DNA of 64,000 bases, from contig MCFH01000002.1 in NCBI GenBank assembly GCA_002104945.1, positions 1,612,001 through 1,676,000 of the forward strand, read 5' to 3'. Source of the stretch: Piromyces finnis finn. Taxonomy: Eukaryota; Fungi; Neocallimastigomycota. Every line of letters begins with the position of its first letter. The first letter of the stretch is position 1. Below the pieces are notes generated by a model that was given only the letters and a program-made list of their open reading frames with translations, was not told the DNA's origin and searched no databases. Below are positions 32-54,914 of the stretch, piece by piece. Position numbers and translations under genes: made by a program.

Positions 32-1878
32 TTAAAATAATTTACTTTGAACAAGTACTCCATAAATCACCACAACCATCAACTTTCCAGTAAATTGATG
101 GTAAGTCAGTTCTTCCAATAGACTTCGTCTTTAATTTATATTCGCTTTTTTCCATCATTGCATCTAAAAATATTAACAAGTAATAATTATAAAAAAAAAT
201 AAAATTAAATATTTCCTATCGCTTTTTATCATTAATGTATAATATATAATAAGATTTAATATTACTAGTAAATGGATCAATGGCAGCTACTAATTCATCT
301 TCTTTAATAATATATTTATCTATATAATAATAAAAATAATAAACATATTAAATGATATATACTTTTATTTATATGCAATTAACTTTTCATAATTACCGGT
401 TCCATAATAATCTTCACCGACAGTATACCAAAACATATTCATTGGAACATCAGCATCGAGGATTTGCTTTGTCCATGTTTTGTAATATTGAATACGTTCT
501 TCTTTTGAACAGTCAGTTGGAATTTCAAGACCCCATTCTTCAAATACTACTGGTTTATTTAATTTTTTTCCTACAGCTTGATGTGATTCAATCCAATCTT
601 TAGTATGAGAAACTAAATCTTTCATTCCCCATGGAATAGGATAATAATGATAAGTATTATAATCAATATTTGGAAGTGCTGTTAAAGCCTCAAAATCAGT
701 ACCTTCATCATATTTGTATGCATATAATCCTTTAGATCCCTCTGGAGCTTCAAGACCAAAACCTATATTATTACAAAATATTCATTAATAATTTAATGTA
801 TTATTTAAAAAAACTTTATATAATTATTTTTTTAAATAAATAAATATATATATATGTATTAATTACCTTCACACCCGACTGATACTAAGTGGTTGGGGTC
901 TAGTTCTTTAATATATGAACTAATATCATTAGCCCATTCAGTTATAACCTCAGGAGTGCATTTACCTGATTGAGGAAGTCCAGAAGGACCATTTCCGCAT
1001 CTTGGCTCATTAGCTAATTGCCAAGAAAATATTGTAGGATCATCACTATAACGAATATTGGTATGACGATTAATACGAGTAATTAACAATTTAATATAGC
1101 TTTTGAATGCCTTACGGATATCTGTATTAGTATAGAAATCATCATGATATTTACCACCATAACCTTTAACCCATTCATCCATACCACCATAATCAGTCCA
1201 ATTATTCTTTATTGAAATAATACATTAATTAACTTATATTTAATATTCATATATTAATATATTAATAAATTTGTATATTAAAATTCATACAGTAAAACCT
1301 AAAACTAATCTGATATTTCTTTGTGATGCTGCTGCTATAAAGTAATCGATAGCTTCCATATTATCTTCAAGAAATACAGCCTTATAATATATTATATATC
1401 ATTATATATTATTTTAAATATCTTAAAATAAAATTATATATAATATTTTATATTAAGATTAAATACTTTTATTATGTTTTTATTACCTTTCCATTTTCAA
1501 ATTTCACAAATTGTTTGTCACCACACACCTTAAGATCACAAAATGCCCATGCACGAACTACTTGAATATTATGTTTTGCTGATACTTCTAATGCAAGATC
1601 CACCCTTTCATTTTGAGAACTATGTAAATAGTCTTTACATATATTATAATATATATTACATCATACACATTTTATTTCAATGGTTAGATTCTATTAATTA
1701 ATAAATGTTTTTTCTTTTATTTTTAAATAAATATACATGTATTTGTTCCAGAAAAATATATTTTGTAGCCATCAATATAAAAGTTTGTCCCTTCAGTGTA
1801 TACATAACCACCGAGGATTGCATATGTAGGAACCAGCAATAAAAAGAATAAATTTAATAATATCGTTAAATTTATCAT
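32..1878 (-). CDS. Secreted endo-1,4-beta-mannanase, glycoside hydrolase family 5 (subfamily 7-like), ~7 exons, no dockerin
   Basis: Spliced by hand across GT-AG introns: signal peptide MINLTILLNLFFLLLVPTYA; GTNTYYL; VVRAWAF; NNWTDYGGMD; acid/base motif WQLANEPRC; TYHYYP; nucleophile motif VVFEEWG. Ends ...VDGCGDLWSTCSSKLF* (TAA at 34-32). ORF-track pieces 859..1182 and 365..625 fall in exons. Confidence 0.88.
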
Positions 1879-5535: not shown

Positions 5536-8500
5536 TTATCTTTTTCTATCTTTATTAATTAAATCATTATTTTTATTTATTATAATTGCGTCTAATAATG
5601 ATTCAATGCTTTCATCATATATTTTAGAGTCTCTTGGATCTTTTTTTTTTTCTTCATCATATTTTTGAATATTTTCTCTTTTTTTCTTTAATGAAATATC
5701 TTCGATTTTTCCCATTCTAAGTGGTGCATTTTTTGAATACTTAAATCCTTTTGTTTTATTTACACTAATGTTATTTGTGTTTGTTGACTTAGTATTTGTT
5801 GATGAACTTTTTGACTTATTACCTATTGCCAAATCATCAATTTGCTTTTTACTAGATAATGTTTTAGATCTGTGCATTGATAAATCGTCAACTGGTTCTT
5901 TGTTAGAAGTACCTTTACCTCTCTGAATAGCAAGATCATCAATAATATTTTTATTGGTGTTTGAAGAAGAATTTGTATTTCTATTCATACCTATTCCACC
6001 TTTATTGCTTTTAAAATTTGATGAAGTATTTCCTTTTCCTATTCTAAATAAACTATTACTTGATCTTGTACCTGCTGAATCTTTATTTCTATACATTGCT
6101 AAGTCATCAACTGGTTCTTTATTAGTACTTCCTTTATTTCTATACATAGAAAGATCATCAATTGGTTCTTTATTGACACCTCCTTTATTTCTATACATAG
6201 AAAGATCATCAACTGGTTCTTTATTGACACCCCCTTTATTTCTGTACATTGCTAAGTCATCAATTGGTTCTTTATTAGTACTTCCTTTATTTCTATACAT
6301 AGAAAGATCATCAATTGGTTCTTTATTAACACCTCCTTTATTTCTATACATAGCAAGATCATCAACTGGTTCTTTATTGACACCTCCTTTATTTCTGTAC
6401 ATTGCTAAATCATCAACTGGTTCTTTATAGACACTTCCTTTATTTCTATACATAGCAAGATCATCAACTGGTTCTTTATTGACACCTCCTTTATTTCTGT
6501 ACATTGCTAAATCATCAACTGGTTCTTTATAGACACTTCCTTTATTTCTATACATAGCAAGATCATCAACTGGTTCTTTATTGACACCTCCTTTATTTCT
6601 GTACATTGCTAAATCATCACTTGGTTCCTTGTTTGTATTTGCCTTATTTCTATACATTGCTAAATCATCGACTGGTTCTTTATTAGTATTTGCTTTATTT
6701 CTGTACATTGCAAGATCATCAACTGGTTCCTTGTTCGTATTTGCTTTGTTTCTATACATTGCTAAATCATCAACTGGTTCCTTATTAGTATTTCCTTTAT
6801 TTCTATACATTGCAAGATCATCAACTGGTTCCTTATTAGTATTTGCCTTGTTTCTATACATTGCAAGATCATCGACTGGTTCCTTGTTTGTATTTGCCTT
6901 GTTTCTGTACATAGCAAGGTCATCGACTGGTTCTTTATTAGTATTTGCCTTATTTCTATACATTGCTAAATCATCGACTGGTTCTTTATTAGTATTTCCT
7001 TTATTTCTGTACATAGCAAGGTCATCGACTGGTTCCTTGTTTGTATTTGCCTTGTTTCTGTACATTGCAAGATCATCAACTGGTTCTTTATTAGTATTTG
7101 CCTTGTTTCTATACATTGCAAGATCATCAACTGGTTCCTTGTTTGTATTTGCCTTATTTCTATACATAGCAAGGTCATCGACTGGTTCTTTGTTTGTATT
7201 TGCCTTGTTTCTATACATTGCAAGATCATCAACTGGTTCTTTATTAATACTTCCTTTGTTTCTATACATTGCAAGGTCATCAACCGGTTCCTTGTTTGTA
7301 TTTGCCTTATTTCTATACATCGCAAGGTCATCGACTGGTTCTTTGTTTGTATTTGCCTTGTTTCTATACATTGCAAGGTCATCGACTGGTTCTTTGTTTG
7401 TATTTGCTTTATTTCTATACATTGCTAAATCATCGACTGGTTCTTTATTAGTATTGGCTTTGTTTCTATACATAGCAAGGTCATCGACTGGTTCTTTGTT
7501 TGTATTTGCTTTATTTCTATACATAGCAAGGTCATCGACTGGTTCCTTGTTTGTATTTGCCTTGTTTCTATACATTGCAAGATCATCAACTGGTTCTTTA
7601 TTAATACTTCCTTTGTTTCTATACATTGCAAGGTCATCGACTGGTTCTTTGTTTGTATTTGCCTTGTTTCTATACATTGCAAGGTCATCGACTGGTTCTT
7701 TGTTTGTATTTGCTTTATTTCTATACATTGCTAAATCATCGACTGGTTCTTTATTAGTATTGGCTTTGTTTCTATACATAGCAAGGTCATCGACTGGTTC
7801 TTTGTTTGTATTTGCTTTATTTCTATACATAGCAAGGTCATCGACTGGTTCCTTGTTTGTATTTGCCTTGTTTCTATACATTGCAAGATCATCGACTGGT
7901 TCTTTGTTTGTATTTGCTTTATTTCTATACATAGCAAGGTCATCGACTGGTTCCTTGTTTGTATTTGCCTTGTTTCTATACATTGCAAGATCATCGACTG
8001 GTTCTTTGTTTGTATTTGCTTTATTTCTATACATAGCAAGGTCATCTACTGGTTCTTTGTTTGTATTTGCTTTATTTCTGTACATTGCAAGATCATCGAC
8101 TGGTTCTTTATTAGTATTGGCTTTGTTTCTGTACATTGCAAGATCATCAACTGGTTCTTTATTTGTATTTGCTTTATTTCTATACATCGCAAGGTCATCG
8201 ACTGGTTCCTTGTTTGTATTTGCCTTGTTTCTATACATTGCAAGATCATCGACTGGTTCTTTGTTTGTATTTGCTTTATTTCTATACATAGCAAGGTCAT
8301 CTACTGGTTCTTTGTTTGTATTTGCTTTATTTCTGTACATTGCAAGATCATCGACTGGTTCTTTATTAGTATTGGCTTTGTTTCTGTACATTGCAAGATC
8401 ATCAACTGGTTCTTTATTTGTATTTGCTTTATTTCTATACATCGCAAGGTCATCGACTGGTTCTTTGTTTGTATTTGCTTTATTTCTATACATTGCAAGG

Positions 8501-11500
8501 TCATCGACTGGTTCTTTATTAGTATTTGCCTTATTTCTATACATAGCAAGGTCATCAACTGGTTCTTTATTTGTATTTGCCTTGTTTCTATACATCGCAA
8601 GGTCATCGACTGGTTCTTTGTTTGTATTTGCCTTGTTTCTATACATTGCTAAATCATCGACTGGTTCTTTATTAGTATTGGCTTTGTTTCTATACATAGC
8701 AAGGTCATCGACTGGTTCTTTGTTTGTATTTGCTTTATTTCTATACATAGCAAGGTCATCGACTGGTTCCTTGTTTGTATTTGCTTTGTTTCTATACATA
8801 GCAAGGTCATCGACTGGTTCCTTGTTTGTATTTGCTTTGTTTCTATACATAGCAAGGTCATCGACTGGTTCTTTGTTTGTATTTGCTTTATTTCTATACA
8901 TTGCAAGGTCATCGACTGGTTCTTTATTAGTATTTGCCTTATTTCTATACATAGCAAGGTCATCAACTGGTTCTTTATTTGTATTTGCCTTGTTTCTGTA
9001 CATTGCAAGATCATCGACTGGTTCTTTGTTTGTATTTGCTTTATTTCTGTACATTGCAAGATCATCAACTGGTTCTTTATTTGTATTTGCTTTATTTCTG
9101 TACATTGCAAGATCATCGACTGGTTCTTTGTTTGTATTTGCTTTATTTCTGTACATTGCAAGATCATCGACTGGTTCCTTGTTTGTATTTGCCTTGTTTC
9201 TATACATTGCAAGATCATCAACTGGCTCTTTATTAGTATTGGCTTTGTTTCTGTACATTGCTAAATCATCGACTGGTTCTTTGTTTGTATTTGCCTTGTT
9301 TCTATACATAGCAAGATCATCGACTGGTTCTTTGTTTGTATTTGCTTTATTTCTGTACATTGCAAGATCATCAACTGGTTCTTTATTAGTATTTGCCTTG
9401 TTTCTATACATAGCAAGGTCATCGACTGGTTCTTTATTTGTATTTGCCTTATTTCTATACATAGCAAGGTCATCGACTGGTTCTTTGTTTGTATTTGCCT
9501 TGTTTCTATACATTGCAAGATCATCAACTGGTTCTTTGTTTGTATTTGCCTTGTTTCTATACATTGCAAGATCATCAACTGGTTCTTTGTTTGTATTTGC
9601 CTTATTTCTGTACATAGCAAGATCATCGACTGGCTCCTTATTAGTATTTGCCTTGTTTCTATACATTGCTAAATCATCGACTGGTTCTTTATTAATACTT
9701 CCTTTGTTTCTATACATTGCAAGGTCATCAACCGGTTCCTTGTTTGTATTTGCCTTATTTCTGTACATAGCAAGATCATCAACTGGTTCTTTATTAGTAT
9801 TTGCCTTGTTTCTATACATAGCAAGGTCATCGACTGGTTCCTTGTTTGTATTTGCCTTGTTTCTATACATTGCAAGATCATCAACTGGTTCTTTATTAGT
9901 ATTGGCTTTGTTTCTGTACATTGCAAGATCATCAACTGGTTCTTTATTTGTATTTGCCTTATTTCTGTACATAGCAAGATCATCAACTGGTTCTTTATTA
10001 GTATTTGCCTTGTTTCTATACATTGCTAAATCATCAATTGGTTCCTTGTTTGTATTTGCTTTGTTTCTGTACATTGCAAGATCATCGACTGGTTCTTTAT
10101 TAGTATTTGCCTTATTTCTATACATAGCAAGGTCATCGACTGGTTCTTTATTAGTATTTCCTTTATTTCTATACATAGCAAGGTCATCGACTGGTTCTTT
10201 GTTTGTATTGGCTTTGTTTCTGTACATTGCAAGATCATCGACTGGTTCTTTATTAGTATTTGCCTTATTTCTATACATAGCAAGGTCATCGACTGGTTCT
10301 TTGTTTGTATTTGCTTTATTTCTGTACATTGCAAGATCATCGACTGGTTCCTTGTTTGTATTTGCCTTGTTTCTATACATTGCAAGATCATCAACTGGCT
10401 CTTTATTAGTATTGGCTTTGTTTCTGTACATTGCTAAATCATCGACTGGTTCTTTGTTTGTATTTGCCTTGTTTCTATACATTGCTAAATCATCAATTGG
10501 TTCCTTGTTTGTATTTGCTTTGTTTCTGTACATTGCAAGATCATCGACTGGTTCTTTATTAGTATTTGCCTTATTTCTATACATAGCAAGGTCATCGACT
10601 GGTTCTTTATTAGTATTTCCTTTATTTCTATACATAGCAAGGTCATCGACTGGTTCTTTGTTTGTATTGGCTTTGTTTCTGTACATTGCAAGATCATCGA
10701 CTGGTTCTTTATTAGTATTTGCCTTATTTCTATACATAGCAAGGTCATCGACTGGTTCTTTGTTTGTATTTGCCTTGTTTCTATACATAGCAAGGTCATC
10801 GACTGGTTCTTTGTTTGTATTTGCTTTGTTTCTATACATTGCAAGATCATCGACTGGTTCTTTGTTCGTATTTGCTTTGTTTCTATACATAGCAAGATCA
10901 TCAACTGGTTCTTTATTAGTATTTGCCTTGTTTCTATACATTGCTAAATCATCAATTGGTTCCTTGTTTGTATTTGCTTTATTTCTATACATTGCTAAAT
11001 CATCGACTGGTTCTTTATTAGTATTTACCTTGTTTCTATACATTGCAAGATCATCAACTGGTTCTTTGTTTGTATTTGCTTTGTTTCTATACATTGCAAG
11101 ATCATCAACTGGTTCTTTGTTTGTATTTGCCTTGTTTCTATACATTGCAAGATCATCAACTGGTTCTTTATTTGTATTTGCCTTGTTTCTATACATTGCA
11201 AGATCATCAACTGGTTCTTTATTTGTATTTGCCTTGTTTCTATACATTGCAAGATCATCAACTGGTTCTTTATTAGTATTTGCCTTGTTTCTATACATTG
11301 CAAGATCATCAACTGGTTCCTTGTTTGTATTTGCTTTATTTCTGTACATTGCAAGATCATCAACTGGTTCTTTATTTGTATTTGCTTTATTTCTGTACAT
11401 TGCAAGATCATCGACTGGTTCTTTATTAGTATTGGCTTTGTTTCTGTACATTGCAAGATCATCAACTGGTTCTTTATTTGTATTTGCCTTATTTCTGTAC

Positions 11501-42411: not shown

Positions 42412-45400
42412 ATTAATAACAACAATAACAACAATAATAATAACAAAAAAAATAGGTAATTAATATGTTCTAGTAATTTTAAGTAATAGCAAAAAGATTA
42501 TTATTATTTCTAAATTATATTTAATATTCAATGTGATTGAAAGTCAAGGTCAAGGTTTATTAGGAGATGAAATTATTATCAAAATTAATTGTGCCATATT
42601 CCCTATTCCATATTTTCCTTATTCCATATTCCTACTAATAAAAAAAAAAATTTTTTTTAATTTATCAACGACTTTTAAATTTATTCATCGACAATTTTTA
42701 GTATTACTTCTCATACTAATAACAGTTTATGTTTATATTATATTTTAGTATATTTTAGTACTATTTATATTAATATTAAAAAAAAATTTATATTACTTCA
42801 TATATATATATATAATGAATATGATTAATCATATAACCTATTATCCTATATTTAGTTAATTTTTTTCATACTTTCTATTATACATATATATTTTTTCTTA
42901 TTTATTTTACTTTATTGTTTTATATTTTTATTTCTTTATTTTTTTTTTGATTTATTTTATATACATTAAAAAATATAAATTACATTTTATAAAGTATTTT
43001 ATTTTTATTTTCTTCACTATTATTTTGTTATTTTTTTTTACTTTATTTTTATTTTAAAATTTTAAGTAAAAAATGACAACACTTTATATTGCTAATTATT
43101 TAAATTTAACAATCAAGTGGCATACCACACCAGTCACCATTTTCAACACCCCAGTCACCGTCGGCATCTTGGTACCAGACAGTACCACAAGTGGAACAGC
43201 ACTTGTAACCTTGGTTGGTAATAGCTGATGGGCAGATTTCACCACCACCGCAACCACACCAGTTACCGTTTTCAACACCCCAGTCACCGTCAGCATCGGT
43301 GTAAACAACTTGGCAGTTCTTAGAACAGCACTTGTAACCTTGTCTAGTAATTGAAGTTGGGCAAGTACCAGTCTTGTTACCACTGCTGTTGTTGTTGTTG
43401 TTGTTGTTGTGGTTGTTGTTGTTACCACCCTTACCGCCGTAAGAATCTAAACCGTAAATGGAGATAATACCGTTGGCAACCATAATTTCAGTTTGACCCC
43501 AGAATCTGTGGTAAGTGAATTCTGGTGGGTTACCACCGTTAAGGAAGTCTTCAACTTGAGCCCAATCTGGATCTTCCTTGTACTTTGGACGAATGTCAAT
43601 GAAGGTAACACCACTCTTAATGTTAGCACCTTGAGCATTCTTACCAGTCCAACCAGATGGAACGTAAACTTCACCACCGAACTTGTCGTAATCAGCACGA
43701 GCTTCAGTAATAGCATAACCAAGATCATCCTTGTAGTTTTCAATGGCATCCATAACATCAACGGCAAGTTGAATACCTTCGTCATCACCGTCCTTCATAG
43801 AAACCCACATTAAAGCCTTGACAATAGAGGCAATAGAACCAAGATCACAACCTTCAGAGGTAACAGTACCGTGGAGAGAAGCGTTGAGGTTGGACTTTTT
43901 GAAGTTGGAGGACTTCCATTCATCTGGATTACCATCCCAACCTAAGTTAGTGGCGTGGATAACTTCACCATTGCTGACACGAGTAGTTTCCTTAACCCAC
44001 TTAGCCCAGTTTTGACAAACAAGACCAGCTCTTTCATCACCAGAAAGGTAGTATAAGGAACAGACACGTTCCATACCCCAACCTTGCATACCAGTCCAGT
44101 TGTTGGATGGTGGGTCGTGGTAAACTGGTTGCCAATCGTACCACATACCGTAGAAGGTAGTGATTTCGCTAGATGGCTTAGCGTAAGAACCTTGCCATGA
44201 GTTAGTGGCACCACCAGCAATACAACCTTCTGGAGTTTGTAACCATCTGAATAATTCTAATTGACGTTCCATAGAAGTAGCCCAATCCTTAGCACCAGTA
44301 GCAGATTTTGGCTTGAAAGCAGATTGAGTAGAAAGAATCCAGGCAGCTAATGGTGATTGGTAACCAGTGTGAGTGTGAGAAGAACCAATTCTCCAAGCCC
44401 AGTCACCTTGTAAACCACCACCCCAGGCGAAGTACCAGGAAATAAGGTAGTGAGCAGAGTTCTTACCAGAACCAGCAGAACATTGTTGGTATCCAACACA
44501 GTTACCAATCTTCTTGAAGTACTTATCGTATTGAGCATAACGTAAGTAATCACCAAGCTTGGCAGCATTGGAAGCAACGGATGAAAGGTTAACACCATCT
44601 TCATCAGCCCATAACCAGGCGAAGTAGGCAGCTTGAATAGCACGAGCATCAGCATCTGGAGCAGCAGTGTATCTCCATTGCTTGGCGTAACTGTTATCAA
44701 CAGTGAAAAGATCTAAGAAACCGTTACGACCACCCCACTTCATGGCTTCCCAACATGGGTGTGGAACAGTCTTCCAAGTAGATTCAGATGGACCACGTTG
44801 GAAGGTGTTAATGAAAGATGGCTTAGACTTACCATCACCTTGTTGACCATAACCATACCAGTTATCACCATCAATAATCCAGTGCATAGCGTAAATATCC
44901 CAGTTACCGTAGGCTTGGGAAAGTTCCTTAGCAATTGGATCTTCACCAACAATACCGTTTTGGAAGATAAGTTCAGATGGATAACCATCAATATCATCAT
45001 GTTCAGCAGCGTAAGTAGCTGGAGATGATGGGTTGTACTTACTGTTACCTGGTTGGTTCTTGCTGTCTGGAATCATGTGCTTTTCTAAGTAACTCCAGGC
45101 AGTTTCAACACCAGAGTAATCACCGGTAAGTTTACCGTTAACAGCTTCTAACCAAATCCAGAAAGAATAGGTTTCAGAGACAGATTCGTGACCATGATCT
45201 GGAGCTTCAACCATAAGAGTTTCAACAGAGTGGTATGGAACATTTTCTGGTGAGAAGTATTCAGAATTGTATGAACCATTTCCAGTCATAATGTTGTAAT
45301 GTTCAATAGCACGTTGAGCGTAAACATCATTGGCACGCTTCTTCATGGCTGGTGCAGCAATAACAGCAGCAGAAGCACTAAGTAAAGTTAATGCAGTTCT

Positions 45401-45431
45401 GATAGATGGCATGTTAAAAAAATTATTTTTT
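42412..45431 (-). repeat. Left arm of large inverted repeat (GH48 gene plus 3' flank)
   Basis: Reverse complement of 47747-50636 plus 55200-55329. The 3' flank matched by eye, including homopolymer lengths. Confidence 0.93.
43106..45412 (-). CDS. cel48A: Cellulosomal GH48 cellobiohydrolase with two C-terminal fungal dockerin (CBM10-like) domains, intronless; copy 1
   Basis: 768 aa: signal peptide and KKR; GH48 motifs ESVSETYSFWIWLEA, FINTFQRGPSESTWKT, QWRYTAAPDADARAIQA, HYLISWY, GGATNSW and YHRFWGQTEI; poly-N linker; two CCS..C.V.Y.DADGDWGVENG.WCG modules. Confidence 0.96.
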   Translation of the reverse strand: MPSIRTALTLLSASAAVIAAPAMKKRANDVYAQRAIEHYNIMTGNGSYNSEYFSPENVPYHSVETLMVEAPDHGHESVSETYSFWIWLEAVNGKLTGDYSGVETAWSYLEKHMIPDSKNQPGNSKYNPSSPATYAAEHDDIDGYPSELIFQNGIVGEDPIAKELSQAYGNWDIYAMHWIIDGDNWYGYGQQGDGKSKPSFINTFQRGPSESTWKTVPHPCWEAMKWGGRNGFLDLFTVDNSYAKQWRYTAAPDADARAIQAAYFAWLWADEDGVNLSSVASNAAKLGDYLRYAQYDKYFKKIGNCVGYQQCSAGSGKNSAHYLISWYFAWGGGLQGDWAWRIGSSHTHTGYQSPLAAWILSTQSAFKPKSATGAKDWATSMERQLELFRWLQTPEGCIAGGATNSWQGSYAKPSSEITTFYGMWYDWQPVYHDPPSNNWTGMQGWGMERVCSLYYLSGDERAGLVCQNWAKWVKETTRVSNGEVIHATNLGWDGNPDEWKSSNFKKSNLNASLHGTVTSEGCDLGSIASIVKALMWVSMKDGDDEGIQLAVDVMDAIENYKDDLGYAITEARADYDKFGGEVYVPSGWTGKNAQGANIKSGVTFIDIRPKYKEDPDWAQVEDFLNGGNPPEFTYHRFWGQTEIMVANGIISIYGLDSYGGKGGNNNNHNNNNNNNSSGNKTGTCPTSITRQGYKCCSKNCQVVYTDADGDWGVENGNWCGCGGGEICPSAITNQGYKCCSTCGTVWYQDADGDWGVENGDWCGMPLDC

Positions 45432-47765: not shown

Positions 47766-50072
47766 ATGCCATCTATCAGAACTGCATTAACTTTACTTAG
47801 TGCTTCTGCTGCTGTTATTGCTGCACCAGCCATGAAGAAGCGTGCCAATGATGTTTACGCTCAACGTGCTATTGAACATTACAACATTATGACTGGAAAT
47901 GGTTCATACAATTCTGAATACTTCTCACCAGAAAATGTTCCATACCACTCTGTTGAAACTCTTATGGTTGAAGCTCCAGATCATGGTCACGAATCTGTCT
48001 CTGAAACCTATTCTTTCTGGATTTGGTTAGAAGCTGTTAACGGTAAACTTACCGGTGATTACTCTGGTGTTGAAACTGCCTGGAGTTACTTAGAAAAGCA
48101 CATGATTCCAGACAGCAAGAACCAACCAGGTAACAGTAAGTACAACCCATCATCTCCAGCTACTTACGCTGCTGAACATGATGATATTGATGGTTATCCA
48201 TCTGAACTTATCTTCCAAAACGGTATTGTTGGTGAAGATCCAATTGCTAAGGAACTTTCCCAAGCCTACGGTAACTGGGATATTTACGCTATGCACTGGA
48301 TTATTGATGGTGATAACTGGTATGGTTATGGTCAACAAGGTGATGGTAAGTCTAAGCCATCTTTCATTAACACCTTCCAACGTGGTCCATCTGAATCTAC
48401 TTGGAAGACTGTTCCACACCCATGTTGGGAAGCCATGAAGTGGGGTGGTCGTAACGGTTTCTTAGATCTTTTCACTGTTGATAACAGTTACGCCAAGCAA
48501 TGGAGATACACTGCTGCTCCAGATGCTGATGCTCGTGCTATTCAAGCTGCCTACTTCGCCTGGTTATGGGCTGATGAAGATGGTGTTAACCTTTCATCCG
48601 TTGCTTCCAATGCTGCCAAGCTTGGTGATTACTTACGTTATGCTCAATACGATAAGTACTTCAAGAAGATTGGTAACTGTGTTGGATACCAACAATGTTC
48701 TGCTGGTTCTGGTAAGAACTCTGCTCACTACCTTATTTCCTGGTACTTCGCCTGGGGTGGTGGTTTACAAGGTGACTGGGCTTGGAGAATTGGTTCTTCT
48801 CACACTCACACTGGTTACCAATCACCATTAGCTGCCTGGATTCTTTCTACTCAATCTGCTTTCAAGCCAAAATCTGCTACTGGTGCTAAGGATTGGGCTA
48901 CTTCTATGGAACGTCAATTAGAATTATTCAGATGGTTACAAACTCCAGAAGGTTGTATTGCTGGTGGTGCCACTAACTCATGGCAAGGTTCTTACGCTAA
49001 GCCATCTAGCGAAATCACTACCTTCTACGGTATGTGGTACGATTGGCAACCAGTTTACCACGACCCACCATCCAACAACTGGACTGGTATGCAAGGTTGG
49101 GGTATGGAACGTGTCTGTTCCTTATACTACCTTTCTGGTGATGAAAGAGCTGGTCTTGTTTGTCAAAACTGGGCTAAGTGGGTTAAGGAAACTACTCGTG
49201 TCAGCAATGGTGAAGTTATCCACGCCACTAACTTAGGTTGGGATGGTAATCCAGATGAATGGAAGTCCTCCAACTTCAAAAAGTCCAACCTCAACGCTTC
49301 TCTCCACGGTACTGTTACCTCTGAAGGTTGTGATCTTGGTTCTATTGCCTCTATTGTCAAGGCTTTAATGTGGGTTTCTATGAAGGACGGTGATGACGAA
49401 GGTATTCAACTTGCCGTTGATGTTATGGATGCCATTGAAAACTACAAGGATGATCTTGGTTATGCTATTACTGAAGCTCGTGCTGATTACGACAAGTTCG
49501 GTGGTGAAGTTTACGTTCCATCTGGTTGGACTGGTAAGAATGCTCAAGGTGCTAACATTAAGAGTGGTGTTACCTTCATTGACATTCGTCCAAAGTACAA
49601 GGAAGATCCAGATTGGGCTCAAGTTGAAGACTTCCTTAACGGTGGTAACCCACCAGAATTCACTTACCACAGATTCTGGGGTCAAACTGAAATTATGGTT
49701 GCCAACGGTATTATCTCCATTTACGGTTTAGATTCTTACGGCGGTAAGGGTGGTAACAACAACAACCACAACAACAACAACAACAACAACAGCAGTGGTA
49801 ACAAGACTGGTACTTGCCCAACTTCAATTACTAGACAAGGTTACAAGTGCTGTTCTAAGAACTGCCAAGTTGTTTACACCGATGCTGACGGTGACTGGGG
49901 TGTTGAAAACGGTAACTGGTGTGGTTGCGGTGGTGGTGAAATCTGCCCATCAGCTATTACCAACCAAGGTTACAAGTGCTGTTCCACTTGTGGTACTGTC
50001 TGGTACCAAGATGCCGACGGTGACTGGGGTGTTGAAAATGGTGACTGGTGTGGTATGCCACTTGATTGTTAA
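47766..50072 (+). CDS. cel48A: Cellulosomal GH48 cellobiohydrolase with two fungal dockerins, intronless; copy 2 (identical protein to copy 1)
   Basis: Same 768-aa translation as 43106..45412; all eight shadow-frame ORFs listed over the two copies are also identical. Confidence 0.96.
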   Translation: MPSIRTALTLLSASAAVIAAPAMKKRANDVYAQRAIEHYNIMTGNGSYNSEYFSPENVPYHSVETLMVEAPDHGHESVSETYSFWIWLEAVNGKLTGDYSGVETAWSYLEKHMIPDSKNQPGNSKYNPSSPATYAAEHDDIDGYPSELIFQNGIVGEDPIAKELSQAYGNWDIYAMHWIIDGDNWYGYGQQGDGKSKPSFINTFQRGPSESTWKTVPHPCWEAMKWGGRNGFLDLFTVDNSYAKQWRYTAAPDADARAIQAAYFAWLWADEDGVNLSSVASNAAKLGDYLRYAQYDKYFKKIGNCVGYQQCSAGSGKNSAHYLISWYFAWGGGLQGDWAWRIGSSHTHTGYQSPLAAWILSTQSAFKPKSATGAKDWATSMERQLELFRWLQTPEGCIAGGATNSWQGSYAKPSSEITTFYGMWYDWQPVYHDPPSNNWTGMQGWGMERVCSLYYLSGDERAGLVCQNWAKWVKETTRVSNGEVIHATNLGWDGNPDEWKSSNFKKSNLNASLHGTVTSEGCDLGSIASIVKALMWVSMKDGDDEGIQLAVDVMDAIENYKDDLGYAITEARADYDKFGGEVYVPSGWTGKNAQGANIKSGVTFIDIRPKYKEDPDWAQVEDFLNGGNPPEFTYHRFWGQTEIMVANGIISIYGLDSYGGKGGNNNNHNNNNNNNSSGNKTGTCPTSITRQGYKCCSKNCQVVYTDADGDWGVENGNWCGCGGGEICPSAITNQGYKCCSTCGTVWYQDADGDWGVENGDWCGMPLDC

Positions 50073-50636: not shown

Positions 50637-53600
50637 ATGTTAAAGAAGAAACTTTCAGTTACCTCAATTTCCTTTTCAGCTCGTAGTAGAAGGAATCACA
50701 AATACACTTTTTCCACACTCAAACGTAAAATTTTAGTTTCTAATAAACATCAACATTCTATTCAACAATCATTTCAACAATCAGTTCAACAATCTCATCA
50801 ACAATCCGATCTTCAACAAGATCTTCAACATGATCTTCAACAAGTTTCCAATCATGAAAATATTCCAGATCTACAGCAAACACAATTTCAATCTCAACAT
50901 TCAACAATTAATTCTAATAGTTCTATCAACTCTGATAACAGTTCAATAGTTGATAGTTCTTCAGTTTCACAGCCATCTAGTAATAGTTCTAATTATTCCT
51001 CTGATGCATCATCCATTAATAATGATGACTTTAATAATAATAATAATAGCAACGATTCTTCCTCATCCAACAAGCCTGATAACTTTTCTTTTTGTCTTAG
51101 TTTGAACACCAATGGGTGGAATCACGAAAAGAGAGATAGTATTAGCTATTTCACAGCTATTTTCAAACCATTATTTTTATGTTTCCAAGAAACTGGTAAT
51201 GGTTCTGGATCGAATACAGATTATCCTTGTCGTGTTACTTTGCGAAACTATAGACACTTTTTCAAGAAAGCTGATGAATCAGTTCCGGGAATGAGAGGTT
51301 TATATTTAGGTTTTCACAATTTGTGTCAAGCCTCACTTGAAAACTTCTCTGGAAAGTATATTATTTCTATTTATACTTTTAGTCTCTGGAATAGATTCCA
51401 ATGCTCGATTGGAAATGTTTATATGCCTCATAGTCATCACAACATCTATGTTGATCATGCAAAGTTAGAAGTTCGCTTGTGGTTACAAACTCATTCATCC
51501 CATCCATCGATTCTTGTTGGTGATTTTAATATGTCTAAAGTAAAATTATCCAACTGGTTATCAACTAATGGATTAGGAGATTGGGAAATTCTTCCGCTTA
51601 GAGGGTCGACTATCTCTTGGACTCGAGGTGATCAATCTTCCGACATTGACCATGCTCTTATCAATTCGAAGATGAAAGATCTTATTCACTCAGGATCATT
51701 TATAAATAATTTTTATCCTGTATCAGACCATAAACCACTTCTTATTAATGATAAAATTATTCCTATGGAAGATTTTTCTAATGACTTTGATGTTCCTAAG
51801 AAAATTCTGAAATGGAAATGATTAAAATGTATTGAGGAAAAGGAATCTATTCTCAGTCATAATAAATTCCAAATACTTTCAGCAAAATTCAATGATCCTA
51901 ATGTTTCTACAGATGAACTTTCCAAAGAGTTTACTTCAACTGCTTTTTCAATTGCAGACGAGCTCAGTATTACCTCAGCAAATAATGTTATAAAGTCTTC
52001 ATTTCATATTTCACAACAAATTTTTAATCTTCAAAAAATCAAAATGAAGTTGTATAAGAGATTTAAAAAAGAAAGAATTTATGATATAGATGAATTTATT
52101 AAACGAATTAAAATCTACCGTAAGCTCATTGATTACATCCACAAAAGATGTAATGAATTTAGGAAGCAAGAATATCTTCATTGGATTAAAACAGGATGTG
52201 AGTATATGAAGAGTCATAATCCTAAGAAGGCCTGGAAATGGATCAAGAAAACTGCAAAAATTGGAAAAGATTCTTTCTTTATTGCTCAACCAATTAAAAA
52301 TAAAAATGGAGAATTAGTTGTTGCTACGGAAGAACAACTAGAAGTGTGGCATGATCATTTCGAAAACCTTGCATCAGATCCAAGTGGTGTAAGTCTTGAT
52401 TTGGAGCATTGGTATGAAGAACCAACGAATAAACGTTTTTCACTTCCTATGCTTGATGAATGGGATATCAACCAAGATATTAGTATTGATGAAGTCAAGT
52501 CAGCTATCCTCTCTACTCCAAATTATAAAGCATCAGGTCCGGATGGTATTCCAATTGAATTTTACAAAGCATTAATTCCATCAAGTAATGATTCTAATAA
52601 TGCTACAGATAATAATTCTTCTGGTAATACCACTTCAGATAATGATGCTCATGGTTTAAATTTTATTCTTAAATTATTCAACCGTATTTGGGATGGAGAC
52701 TTCCCCAACTCATGGAATGAATCCAGTATTGTTTCTATTCCTAAGAAGGGAGATTTGACAGATTGTGATAACTATCGAGGTATATCACTTATCAATAATG
52801 GTATTGAGTTGATTTCCAAAATTGTCACCACTAGAATCTCAGAATATGGTTTAAAGAATAATTTCATTAGACCTGAACAATTTGGTTTTCGAAAAAAGGA
52901 AGAAAGTATCAGTCTTTTCATTTCAATCCAAGAAATATGCCGTAGACGTCAATTAGATAATAAAGAGACATATTTGGCCTTTTTAGATCTCAGGAAAGCA
53001 TACGATTCAGTCCCAATCGGTAATATTCTCCATAAATTAGATTGTTTAGGAATCCGAGGTAAGAGTTTACAATTCATCAAAAATTTATATTTAACATCTA
53101 AGGCTAATGTCAAATTAGATGGACAATTCTCGAAATCTTTTGATGTGAAGAAAGGAGTCCGTCAAGGTTGCCCTCTTTCTCCTATTCTCTTTAATCTCTT
53201 TATTAATGATATATTTAAAGAGTGCGAAGATCTAGGAGTCAGTTTAGGTGACACTCGATGCTGTGGTGGACTTTTTGCAGATGATATAGTTATTTGTGCT
53301 CCAACAAGAGGATGCTTAAAAAAGATGCTTAGAAGAGTTAATGAATGGGCATTGTATAATGAAATGGAATTTGGTATCCAGAAATGTTCAACGATGGTGA
53401 TTCGTCCTGAATCAATAGAAAATCAGAACAAGAGAGATCCAACATTTTACTTAGCAGGACAACCCATTCCAACTACTGATTGTTATACTTATCTTGGTGT
53501 TCCATTTGATAAGAATCTGTCCCTTAAACCAGTAATTAAAGCTCTTAATAACAAGGTTTTGAAAGGACTTTTTTCAGTCAGTAAATTCCTAAGAAATCCT

Positions 53601-54914
53601 AATATTCCTATTCCTTTCAAAAAACTAGTACTTAACTCACAAGTAATCAGCAGAGTTTCATACTTTGCACCATTACTTGGATCCAACAAAGCTAGGTCTA
53701 GGATTGCTCAGAAGCATGTTAACAAAGGATTACGATGGGTTGCCGGAGTTCATAAAGCTGTATCGTTTATATCTTTATACTCTATCTCAAAAGATTTGAA
53801 TATTCCTCCATTGTCAGCCAAATGTGCTTTAGCTCAGGTTAGATGTTTTAACAAATGGAAAAACTCGAATTGTATTATCTCACACCTTGTCAATTACATT
53901 CCTAAATTTAGAAAATACACGTGGTGCAAATCAAGTAGGACACTTGATAAAAAACTAAAGAAACATGGAGATGTTAAAGCAGTTAAAAACTTTTATTGGA
54001 AAGATCTCAAAGGGAATTCAATCAAAGCGCAATATTATGATGATAATAAATTTATTGAAACTAAAGATTTTATTAAATTATGTTATGAGTACCCAGAGTT
54101 TGCCTATGGCTTCTACTGGCTATTGAAAGCAAGAAGCGGATACAAGTTGGATGCTAGAGTTGCCAAAGCTGCTAAATTTGTTGATCCAGTTTGTCCTAAC
54201 TACTGTCCATGTTGCAAGTGTGGAGATCAAAGTATTAAACATTGGTTATTAGATTGTCCAACATTTAGAGATATCCGTATTAAACATTATGATTCTATAG
54301 TCCATCTATTAAATTTTTTCAGTCAACGTAATTCCAATAGTCTTATCAATAATAATGAAATTGATAATGTCAGCAGAGATAGCAATAACAGTAATAGTAA
54401 TAGTAACAATAGTAATAATAACAATAGTAATAATAACAATAGTAGTAATAGTAATAATAGAAATAGTAATAATAACAATAGTAGTAATAGAAATAATAAT
54501 ATTAGTAATGATAGCTATAGTGAAGATAATAATTCTAATTTAGATAGTAATTTAGTTAATGATAGTAATAGTTCTAATAATCCTGTGAATATTAATGTGT
54601 ATGATTATTCTAGTGTGTGCAGTAAAATATTTAAATTCCTTCTTGGGGGAAGAAGTTTTAACAATATTAATTACAATTCAAGGGAATGGAAAGAACTTTG
54701 TAAGCGTCAGATTCAATCTGGTACTAATGAAGGAACACCATTCTTGACGGTAACCGCGGAACTTCTAACCAAAAGCATGCCTTTTGCTATTGGCCAGCAA
54801 TGGTCAATGTTCAAAAGGTTTGAAGCAACATCCAAGAGCGTCAATGCTGAAGAAACAGTAAGACAGGCCAGGAGGGCCAGCGCAACCAATGGAGATCATA
54901 ATTTTGTCCCATGA
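50637..54914 (+). pseudogene. LINE APE-RT-zinc knuckle polyprotein, one frame broken by a single in-frame TGA (51819-51821)
   Basis: APE motifs LNTNG, CFQET, GNVYMP, ILVGDFN, SDIDHAL, SDHKPL. RT motifs KASGPDGIP, YRGISL, QFGFR, FLDLRKAYDSV, GVRQGCPLSPILFN, LFADD, YTYLG. C-terminal CPCC...HWLLDC. ORFs 50625..51821 and 52044..54914 share a frame and the sequence between them is open. Confidence 0.88.

What the first reader, a model, noticed from the sequence alone, without database searches (positions are those of the whole stretch)
5536..14250. Secreted 2904-aa protein with 139 exactly phased 17-aa repeats: candidate polypeptide precursor or new extracellular repeat polymer
Seen: signal peptide, Cys-rich domain, dibasic-rich linker (e.g. 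KKKKIKKR), then 139 units with a near-invariant 12-residue core EP[VI]DDL[AS]M[YH]RNK and a variable 5-residue spacer (ANTNK, GGVNK, GSVYK, GNTNK, VNTNK). The unit is charge-neutral (3 basic, 3 acidic). The consensus lacks N-X-S/T sequons despite being Asn-rich, and there is no membrane anchor. Known: fungal KEX2-processed repeat proteins and dikaritin RiPP precursors (ustiloxin UstA) have a signal-plus-repeat layout, UstA with acidic residues before a Tyr-containing core and basic residues after it. Here the layout is PVDD-LAMY-RNK, without canonical KR sites. Inference: either a precursor released as ~139 copies of a small peptide by a non-Kex2 route (monobasic Arg, Asn-specific, or X-Pro dipeptidyl trimming), or an intact structural or adhesive polymer of short amphipathic helices (cyst, zoospore or rhizoid matrix). 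I do not recognise the repeat from any characterised family.
Basis: partly seen in the sequence, partly recalled or inferred. Interest (0 to 1): 0.78.

Follow-up and report, generated by a model that had tools for sequence, protein, structure and literature searches.

The report
Orphan 139-repeat secreted gut-fungus protein
The horse-gut fungus Piromyces finnis has an intact gene for a 332-kDa, probably secreted protein made of 139 copies of a 17-residue unit; selection keeps the units almost identical, the family occurs only in anaerobic gut fungi, and its function is unknown.

Summary
Window 5536-14250 (-) is one open 2904-codon frame in Piromyces finnis. It encodes a signal-peptide-like start, a 12-Cys helical N-domain, a basic linker, 139 consecutive in-phase 17-aa units (aa 366-2728), degenerate units and a short tail.

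New facts:
- 94 units encode the same peptide with 52 different DNA versions. Among central units dS is 0.83, dN 0.017 and dN/dS 0.02.
- The unit is the best-conserved part of the protein: 14/17 consensus identity to an orthologue whose N-domain is 43% identical.
- The only internal KR/RR sites (K258-R259, K2857-R2858) flank the repeat region and are conserved.
- A 1.84-billion-protein HMM search found only five related cluster representatives (six sequences in all), almost all fragments. No Pfam family, solved relative or known fold was found.

It fails the tests for Kex2-processed repeat proteins, dikaritin precursors, ScaA scaffoldins and Ser/Thr-rich GPI wall proteins.

Best reading (about 0.45): a disordered, multivalent extracellular repeat polymer, possibly freed from its end domains by kexin. 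Main rival (about 0.2): a non-Kex2 polypeptide precursor. Expression and processing are untested, so this is an undescribed family with an unresolved mechanism.

The parts
5536..14250 (-). Complete single-exon CDS, 2904 aa plus stop; mature protein about 332 kDa, pI 8.5
   Evidence: single copy in the genome
14194..14250 (-). Signal-peptide-like N-terminus, aa 1-19 (MK, hydrophobic core, S-F-S)
   Evidence: Highest hydropathy of the protein; conserved in P0001, P0002/P0003 and P0004. Inferred, no SignalP run.
13606..14193 (-). Cys-rich helical N-domain, aa 20-215; 12 Cys, of which 9 are invariant in four species
   Evidence: Alignments A1 and A2. AlphaFold2 gives a helical model, pLDDT 77-87 for aa 60-135. 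No Pfam, PDB or fold match.
13156..13605 (-). Basic/acidic linker, aa 216-365, with a predicted long helix (aa 203-259, low confidence)
13474..13479 (-). Dibasic site K258-R259 at the end of KKKKIKKR; the first of only two internal KR/RR sites; conserved as KLKKRR in P0003
13429..13455 (-). Conserved N-side flank motif PLRIKNIMK, aa 266-274 (PLGMKNIMK in P0003)
6067..13155 (-). Array of 139 in-phase 17-aa units, aa 366-2728; consensus EPVDDLAMYRNKANTNK; 272 kDa, net charge 0
5728..6066 (-). Degenerate C-terminal units, aa 2729-2841, keeping I-DDLA-I/M cores in N/S/K-rich spacers
   Evidence: the same layout is seen in P0003 and P0005
5674..5727 (-). Conserved C-side flank motif APLRMGKIEDISLKKKRE, aa 2842-2859, including dibasic site K2857-R2858 (5677-5682)
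   Evidence: present in P0003, P0005 and P0018
5539..5673 (-). C-terminal tail, aa 2860-2904; mixed charge, no hydrophobic anchor; orthologues have an acidic tail instead, with TDTII(F)-type motifs in P0005 and P0018

Best explanation
This is an intact, single-copy gene of Piromyces finnis. It belongs to an undescribed protein family known so far only from related sequences, almost all fragments, that look like other anaerobic gut fungi.

Proposed mechanism:
1. The product enters the secretory pathway through an N-terminal signal peptide (inferred).
2. A disulfide-bonded helical N-domain folds (inferred).
3. The 2363-residue repeat region stays intrinsically disordered (predicted).
4. The repeat region acts outside the cell as a multivalent polymer. 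Each 17-residue unit (acidic EPxDD head, L-x-M-aromatic centre, basic R-N-K...K tail) would be a sequence-specific contact site, either for a still unknown partner or for neighbouring chains. This would give a matrix, coat or adhesive layer on zoospore cysts, rhizoids or sporangia (inferred).
5. The only internal dibasic sites flank the repeat region and are conserved. A Golgi kexin, which the genome encodes, probably cuts there and frees the whole repeat region (about 300 kDa) from the N-domain and the tail (inferred).

Shown here: the anatomy; single copy; restriction to a tiny orphan family; very strong purifying selection on every unit; higher cross-species conservation of the unit than of the globular domain.

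Not shown: transcription, secretion, cleavage, partner, location.
For: - Anatomy and phasing.
- Selection within the array: 94/139 units encode the same peptide with 52 DNA versions. Central units give dS 0.83, dN 0.017, dN/dS 0.021. Heterozygosity by codon position is 0.022/0.019/0.280, which also fixes the reading frame and strand.
- Reliability of the assembly: the longest exact self-match in the array is 314 bp and there is no higher-order period, so 139 copies is well determined.
- Orthologues share the whole layout: the signal, the invariant Cys, K-x-KKR, PL[RG][IM], 17-aa units, APLRMG[KR]IEDI[AS]LK[KR]KRE and an acidic tail.
- Conservation: unit consensus is 14/17 identical across species and mean unit-to-unit identity is 74%, against 43% for the N-domain.
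- Disorder: the repeats are modelled as coil at pLDDT about 27.
- Dibasic sites: KR/RR occurs only at aa 258-259, aa 2857-2858 and the C-terminal end. Kexin P-domains are present in the genome.
- No anchor: no transmembrane or GPI-like hydrophobic tail.
- A conserved 200-aa Cys-rich domain and conserved flank motifs are more than a simple pro-peptide would need.
Against: - There is no evidence here of transcription, secretion or location.
- The partner is unknown.
- Charge segregation in the unit is only modest: kappa is 0.245, and 9% of within-unit shuffles reach that value. Self-association through charge blocks is therefore conjecture.
- Extracellular fungal repeat proteins are usually Ser/Thr-rich, anchored and fast-evolving; this one is none of these.
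- Near-perfect conservation of short units bounded by invariant Lys, with E-P after the Lys, is also what a multi-copy peptide precursor looks like.
- The full-length orthologue has only about 11-15 units. Either copy number is very plastic or that assembly is collapsed.
Confidence: 0.45

Rival explanations
1. The protein is a polypeptide precursor. It would be cut in the secretory pathway at the invariant monobasic positions (after K12 and/or K17, or after R10) by a non-Kex2 protease such as a yapsin-like aspartic protease. Trimming would follow, by a dipeptidyl aminopeptidase (removing E-P) and a carboxypeptidase. This would release about 139 copies of a 10-15-residue peptide that acts as a signal, pheromone or antimicrobial.
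For: - Selection acts on each unit: dN/dS is 0.02 with dS 0.83, and the unit is better conserved across species than the N-domain, as with mature peptides versus pro-regions.
- K12 is invariant (139/139), K17 nearly so (138/139), and R/K10 is always basic. Every unit starts with an X-Pro dipeptide directly after a Lys. This resembles the XA/XP STE13 signature described for fungal precursors (PMC6339444).
- A DPPIV-type peptidase and kexins are encoded in the genome.
- The variable positions 13-16 could be a spacer.
- Copy number differs strongly between species.
Against: - None of the 139 units contains KR or RR, whereas the KEP definition rests on KR/RR/KK sites (PMC6339444).
- Earlier unchecked notes of this scan describe canonical KR-type precursors in this genome.
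- 139 copies is far beyond the known range; alpha-pheromone precursors have 1-16 copies (PMC6339444).
- The whole 17-mer, including most of the 'spacer' (x-N-T/N-N-K), is conserved across species, so no clear distinction between core and spacer exists.
- The large conserved Cys-rich domain and flank motifs are not needed for a precursor.
- The P. finnis assembly was surveyed for KEPs and the motif is absent from the held supplement text (PMC7329392). This is weak evidence, because the pipeline needs dibasic sites.
Confidence: 0.2
2. The protein is a dikaritin-type (ustiloxin-like) RiPP precursor, whose Tyr-containing core would be cross-linked by UstYa-family oxidases.
For: Only a superficial layout: signal peptide plus repeats, with acidic residues before and basic residues after a Tyr.
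Against: - Tyr9 is replaced by Phe or Ile in most orthologue units.
- There are no KR sites in the units.
- No UstYa/DUF3328 hit was found in a six-frame search of the genome (the bacterial controls give no positive control).
- The neighbours are COG8/Dor1, DUF1749 and a proteasome lid subunit, not a biosynthetic cluster.
Confidence: 0.02
3. The feature has no function: an assembly artefact, or a recently expanded coding satellite that is not expressed or is on its way to decay.
For: - No expression data could be reached.
- Codon usage in the N-domain is that of weakly expressed genes: C-ending share 3%, against 70% in the neighbouring GH48 genes.
- No P. finnis entry for the protein came back from the word-based protein search.
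Against: - An 8.7-kb open frame in an 18%-GC genome cannot arise by chance.
- Variation among units is almost purely synonymous.
- The units are too different in DNA (88% identity, longest exact repeat 314 bp) to be a collapse or expansion artefact or a recent burst.
- Orthologues with the same layout exist.
Confidence: 0.05
4. The protein is a cellulosome-related scaffold: the 139 units would be docking sites for fungal dockerins (CBM10) or for plant cell-wall polymers.
For: - The gene lies about 29 kb from a pair of GH48-CBM10 genes.
- The cohesin equivalent of fungal cellulosomes is still unidentified (PMC8262932).
- The layout is large, secreted and repeat-rich.
Against: - There is no similarity to the ScaA repeat, which is a longer Cys-containing G-Y-Y...K-C motif (PMC8262932 Table S1).
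- At 29 kb in a gene-dense region, the linkage is not meaningful.
- The aromatic residue is not conserved as such (Y, F, I, H).
- Nothing here tests binding.
Confidence: 0.08

Closest known systems
Kex2-processed repeat proteins (KEPs), including alpha-factor-type pheromone precursors (PMC6339444, PMC7329392)
   Same: Signal peptide, a pro-region, then tandem near-identical short units of pheromone size (9-24 aa). An X-Pro dipeptide follows a basic residue at each unit start, like a STE13 signature. Copy number varies between species.
   Different: No KR/RR/KK between units. 139 copies against 1-16 in alpha-pheromone precursors. A 200-aa conserved Cys-rich domain and conserved flank motifs. 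Dibasic sites only at the two flanks of the repeat region.
Dikaritin RiPP precursors (UstA of ustiloxin, PhomA, AprA)
   Same: Signal peptide plus repeats with a Tyr-containing short core in P. finnis.
   Different: No KR flanks. The Tyr is not conserved in orthologues. No UstYa/DUF3328 was found in the genome or nearby. No gene cluster.
Ustilago maydis repetitive secreted proteins Rep1 and Rsp3 (comparison from my own knowledge, not tested here)
   Same: Secreted fungal proteins with a non-repeat N-part and length-polymorphic tandem repeats that act at the hyphal surface. Rep1 is cut by Kex2.
   Different: No sequence similarity. Rep1 has KR sites between its units. The units here are much shorter, far more numerous and far better conserved.
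Fungal cellulosome scaffoldin ScaA (PMC8262932)
   Same: Very large, secreted, repeat-rich, specific to Neocallimastigomycota, with no homology outside the phylum.
   Different: ScaA repeats are longer and Cys-containing (G-Y-Y...K-C). Many scaffoldins have a membrane anchor. This protein has Cys only in its N-domain and no anchor.
Polyubiquitin and the RNA polymerase II CTD heptad array (evolutionary analogy only, from my own knowledge)
   Same: Tandem units kept identical at protein level while their DNA diverges at synonymous sites, meaning that selection acts on every unit.
   Different: Those are intracellular, ancient and universal. This family is a lineage-restricted secretory protein with an unrelated sequence.

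Membership tests
Kex2-processed repeat proteins (KEP) | N-terminal signal peptide | tested here: inconclusive
   Typical n/h/c layout, conserved in four orthologues. No signal-peptide predictor was available.
Kex2-processed repeat proteins (KEP) | Three or more near-identical repeats | tested here: met
   139 in-phase units.
Kex2-processed repeat proteins (KEP) | Dibasic KR/RR (less often KK) site between successive repeats | tested here: not met
   KR/RR occurs only at aa 258-259, aa 2857-2858 and the C-terminal end. One unit of 139 has R-K-K.
Kex2-processed repeat proteins (KEP) | Release of the peptides demonstrated | not testable with these tools
   Needs peptidomics.
Dikaritin RiPP precursor (UstA-like) | Conserved Tyr in the core for the ether cross-link | tested here: not met
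   Position 9 is Y/H in P. finnis but F or I in 10 of 11 regular units of P0003.
Dikaritin RiPP precursor (UstA-like) | UstYa/DUF3328 oxidase gene, usually adjacent | tested here: not met
   PF11807 gave no match in a six-frame search of the whole assembly (no positive control). The neighbours are housekeeping genes.
Dikaritin RiPP precursor (UstA-like) | KR-flanked core peptides | tested here: not met
Fungal scaffoldin ScaA | Cys-containing G-Y-Y...K-C repeat motif | tested here: not met
   The ScaA fragment in PMC8262932 Table S1 has nothing in common with the 17-mer. The array has no Cys.
Fungal scaffoldin ScaA | Dockerin binding | not testable with these tools
   Needs a binding assay.
Ser/Thr-rich GPI-anchored fungal wall proteins/adhesins | Ser/Thr-rich repeats and a C-terminal hydrophobic GPI signal | tested here: not met
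   S+T is 7.3% of residues. No hydrophobic C-terminus: the best 19-mer after the signal scores 0.54.
Any curated protein family (Pfam-A) or solved structure | Significant profile or fold match | tested here: not met
   Pfam: none for the N-domain, the C-terminal part, P0003 or P0005; the array gives only repeat-inflated scores with no stretch passing on its own. PDB profile search: none at E up to 1. Foldseek best E-value 0.93; VIA best Z 6.7, generic helices only.

The most novel reading that the evidence does not exclude
The gene is the largest known multi-copy peptide precursor. A non-Kex2 route would cut at the invariant Lys/Arg positions, followed by X-Pro dipeptidyl and carboxypeptidase trimming. 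This would release about 139 copies of a 10-15-residue peptide (core VDDLAMYR) as a secreted signal, for example for zoospore release, encystment or density sensing, or as an agent against rumen competitors. No secreted peptide signal is known in this fungal phylum.
Probability: 0.2. Interest if true: 0.85.

Novelty: new variant of a known kind. Interest (0 to 1): 0.55.

Why it matters
Anaerobic gut fungi are key fibre degraders, but their cell-surface and signalling biology is almost unknown. Much of the literature found here deals with cellulosome scaffoldins.

This gene defines a second, unrelated family of giant repeat proteins restricted to the group. Its units are under selection as strong as in classic multi-copy functional arrays, so the exact 17-residue sequence must do something specific.

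If it is a matrix or adhesive polymer, it gives a handle on attachment and life-stage transitions. If it is a precursor, it would reveal a new processing route and the first secreted peptide signal of the phylum.

The array is also a natural example of codon scrambling. 139 near-identical peptide units are encoded with no exact DNA repeat longer than 314 bp, and synonymous GC content is locally raised. This bears on how long coding repeats stay stable.

Tried and rejected
- Pfam on the N-domain, C-terminal part, array and orthologues gave nothing usable.
- The C-side flank motif looks WH2-like (hydrophobic helix plus LKKK) from memory, but Pfam at E up to 1 gave no WH2 hit, so I dropped it.
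- The PDB sequence profile of the N-domain gave none.
- AlphaFold2 of aa 1-588 and aa 1-260 gave repeats as coil at pLDDT about 27 and an N-domain that is only partly confident. Foldseek and VIA-wide then returned only generic helical or coiled-coil matches.
- ESM Atlas gave no usable hit.
- Word-based protein searches: the whole protein with region 1-420 found nothing in its length window. The N-domain alone found P0001 and P0002. P0003 as query added nothing.
- In the big HMM search, hits below P0005, apart from P0018, are unrelated periodic proteins.
The species, DNA and context of the orthologues could therefore not be obtained, and no cross-species dN/dS was possible.
- Literature string searches for the unit gave no hits. 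Haitjema et al. 2017 is not held in the library.
- A downstream exon or a frameshift at the A11 run near the 3' end was checked: the other frames stop at once and no further exon is seen.
- Charge-block self-association: kappa is not significantly high.
- Amphipathic helix: the hydrophobic moment is low.
- The bacterial promoter/terminator scan is irrelevant for a eukaryote.
- The 1923-aa ORF on the + strand (6581-12352) is an antisense by-product of the repeat. Variation falls on the third codon positions of the minus-strand frame.
Full report
**Identity of the window.** The window is about 18% G+C outside genes. It carries two GH48 genes with fungal CBM10 dockerins, a COG8/Dor1 gene, a LINE-type reverse transcriptase and other eukaryotic housekeeping genes. 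The assembly it belongs to has 56,455,805 bases in 232 contigs. That is exactly the size listed for Piromyces finnis Pirfi3 (PMC7609409).

**The observation.**
- An ATG-initiated open frame of 2904 codons runs on the minus strand from 14250 to 5536.
- Tandem Repeats Finder reports a 51-bp period, 138.6 copies, 88% matches and no indels.
- At protein level there are 139 consecutive units of exactly 17 residues, at aa 366-2728, with the consensus EPVDDLAMYRNKANTNK. Positions 1, 2, 4, 5, 6, 8, 10, 11, 12 and 17 are invariant or nearly so. Positions 13-16 carry most of the variation.
- The start of the protein has the n/h/c layout of a signal peptide, and four relatives share it.
- All 12 cysteines lie in aa 24-201.
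- There is no later hydrophobic segment, and the array contains a single N-x-S/T sequon.

**Is it a real gene?** Four points say yes.
1. An 8.7-kb open frame in an 18%-GC genome cannot arise by chance.
2. The 94 units that encode the majority peptide use 52 different DNA sequences.
   - Mean heterozygosity is 0.022, 0.019 and 0.280 at codon positions 1, 2 and 3 of the minus-strand frame in the central 105 units.
   - Nei-Gojobori estimates among those units are dS 0.83, dN 0.017 and dN/dS 0.021. For all units dN/dS is 0.069, and for the edge units 0.20.
   - This fixes the strand and frame. It also shows that the 1923-aa ORF on the plus strand is an antisense by-product.
3. Eleven synonymous sites are two-state at 20-50% minor frequency and are linked only to their immediate neighbours. 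There is no higher-order period, and the longest exact self-match in the 7.1-kb array is 314 bp. The array is therefore old and internally shuffled, not a recent burst, and its assembly is well determined.
4. The gene is single-copy. Neither the N-domain nor the unit occurs elsewhere in the genome.

**Relatives.**
- The word-based search with the N-domain found P0001 (252 aa, 63% identical) and P0002 (451 aa).
- The cluster of P0002 contains P0003, a complete 742-aa protein.
- A profile search of 1.84 billion representative proteins added only P0004 (N-domain) and P0005 and P0018 (C-terminal pieces). All other hits are unrelated periodic proteins.
- The relatives share the whole plan: the signal; nine invariant Cys; a K-x-KKR site; a PL[RG][IM]KNIMK motif; 17-residue units (EPIDDL[AG]M[FIY][RK]NK[GV]N[TN]NK in P0003); degenerate units; the motif APLRMG[KR]IEDI[AS]LK[KR]KRE; and an acidic tail.
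- The unit consensus is 14/17 identical between P. finnis and P0003, and mean unit-to-unit identity is 74%. The N-domains are 43% identical. The repeat is thus the best-conserved part of the protein, the opposite of what is usual for disordered surface repeats.
- P0003 has only about 11 regular and 4 degenerate units. This is either real plasticity or collapse in a short contig.
The species and DNA of the relatives could therefore not be examined.

**What the parts look like.**
- Pfam, a PDB sequence profile, ESM Atlas, Foldseek and VIA-wide gave nothing specific for the N-domain.
- AlphaFold2 models the N-domain as a helical bundle, with pLDDT 77-87 for aa 60-135, followed by a long low-confidence helix at aa 203-259.
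- Thirteen repeats were modelled as coil at pLDDT about 27, and the helical hydrophobic moment of the core is low. The array is best taken as intrinsically disordered, and the amphipathic-helix idea has no support.
- The unit is a neutral polyampholyte with an acidic head and a basic tail. Its charge segregation (kappa 0.245) is reached by 9% of within-unit shuffles, so this is descriptive only.
- In the whole protein KR/RR occurs only at K258-R259, at K2857-R2858 and at the very C-terminal end. The first two flank the repeat region (about 100 residues from the array on either side) and are conserved in the relatives.
- The genome encodes kexin-type convertases and a DPPIV-type aminopeptidase.

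**Comparison with known families.**
- Kex2-processed repeat proteins are defined by a signal peptide, repeats and KR/RR/KK sites between the repeats (PMC6339444). The last feature is absent here. Copy number (139) is also far above the 1-16 reported for alpha-pheromone precursors. The P. finnis assembly was included in the survey of PMC7329392, and the unit is not in the held supplement text.
- The dikaritin analogy fails on four counts. The Tyr is F or I in the orthologue. There are no KR flanks. There was no UstYa/DUF3328 match in the genome (without a positive control). The neighbours are housekeeping genes.
- The ScaA scaffoldin repeat, shown in PMC8262932 Table S1, is a longer Cys-containing motif with no resemblance to this unit.
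- Ser/Thr-rich GPI wall proteins are excluded by composition and by the lack of a hydrophobic C-terminus.
- The unit string occurs in no paper of the library.

**Mechanism.** Two readings survive.
- I favour (about 0.45) an extracellular multivalent polymer. The protein would be secreted. A kexin would cut it at the two conserved flank sites. The repeat region of about 300 kDa would then present 139 copies of a sequence-specific contact motif to an unknown partner or to other chains, as a matrix, coat or adhesive. The reasons are the conserved, sizeable Cys-rich domain and flank motifs, the placement of the only dibasic sites, the absence of processing sites inside the array, and the conservation of the entire 17-mer rather than a core plus a free spacer.
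- The main rival (about 0.2) is a non-Kex2 precursor cut at the invariant Lys/Arg positions, with the E-P dipeptide trimmed. Unit-level selection, invariant basic residues and an X-Pro start after Lys all fit it.
- Sequence analysis cannot decide between the two. A Western blot with an anti-unit antibody, plus non-tryptic peptidomics, would.
- A dockerin- or cell-wall-binding scaffold (0.08), a non-functional or artefactual array (0.05) and a dikaritin precursor (0.02) are less likely.

**An unexplained side result.** Within the same gene, the share of C-ending codons for N/D/Y/F/H is 3-6% in the N-domain and linker but 27% in the array. Neighbouring housekeeping genes have 4-14%, and the highly biased GH48 genes 70%. 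Either GC-biased gene conversion operates inside the array, or selection favours sequence-scrambled units that avoid long exact repeats.

**Verdict.** The gene founds an undescribed protein family seen so far only in related sequences that look like anaerobic gut fungi. The unit is under exceptionally strong constraint. The ustiloxin/KEP framing does not hold, and function, expression and processing remain open.

Noticed in passing
window 6067-13155 versus 13156-14250: Synonymous GC is locally raised in the array. The C-ending share of N/D/Y/F/H codons is 27% there, against 3-6% in the N-domain and linker of the same gene. Eleven synonymous sites are held at intermediate frequencies. Possible causes are GC-biased gene conversion or selection for scrambled units.
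   Followed up: partly
window 13429-13455 and 5674-5727: Two conserved P-L-[RG]-[IM] motifs, each next to a conserved dibasic site, flank the repeat region in P. finnis and its orthologues. They may be recognition or association elements; their function is unknown.
   Followed up: partly
window 43106-45412 (-) and 47766-50072 (+): Two divergently oriented GH48-CBM10 genes of 768 aa give identical Pfam scores, so they form an inverted duplicate. The scan already noted this as s1-182280.
   Followed up: no
window 52044-54914 (+): A 956-aa ORF with a reverse-transcriptase domain and a weak zf-RVT match, consistent with a LINE-type retroelement next to the GH48 pair.
   Followed up: no
window 6581-12352 (+): A 1923-aa TTG-initiated ORF antisense to the array. 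It is a by-product of a repeat that lacks stop codons in that frame, not a gene.
   Followed up: yes
window 14465-14521 and 14898-15006: (ATTT)14 and (ATT)36 microsatellites lie 215-760 bp upstream of the start codon, in the presumed promoter region.
   Followed up: no
window 859-1182 (-) and 15608-15955 (+): Isolated exon-sized ORFs with GH5 cellulase (weak) and DUF1749 hydrolase matches. They are probably exons of spliced neighbouring genes.
   Followed up: no
window 5640-5655 (-): An A11 homopolymer lies inside the C-terminal tail coding region. The tail differs from the acidic tails of the orthologues (TDTII(F)-type motifs in P0005 and P0018). The alternative frames stop at once, so a long-read homopolymer error is not indicated, but it is not excluded.
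   Followed up: partly
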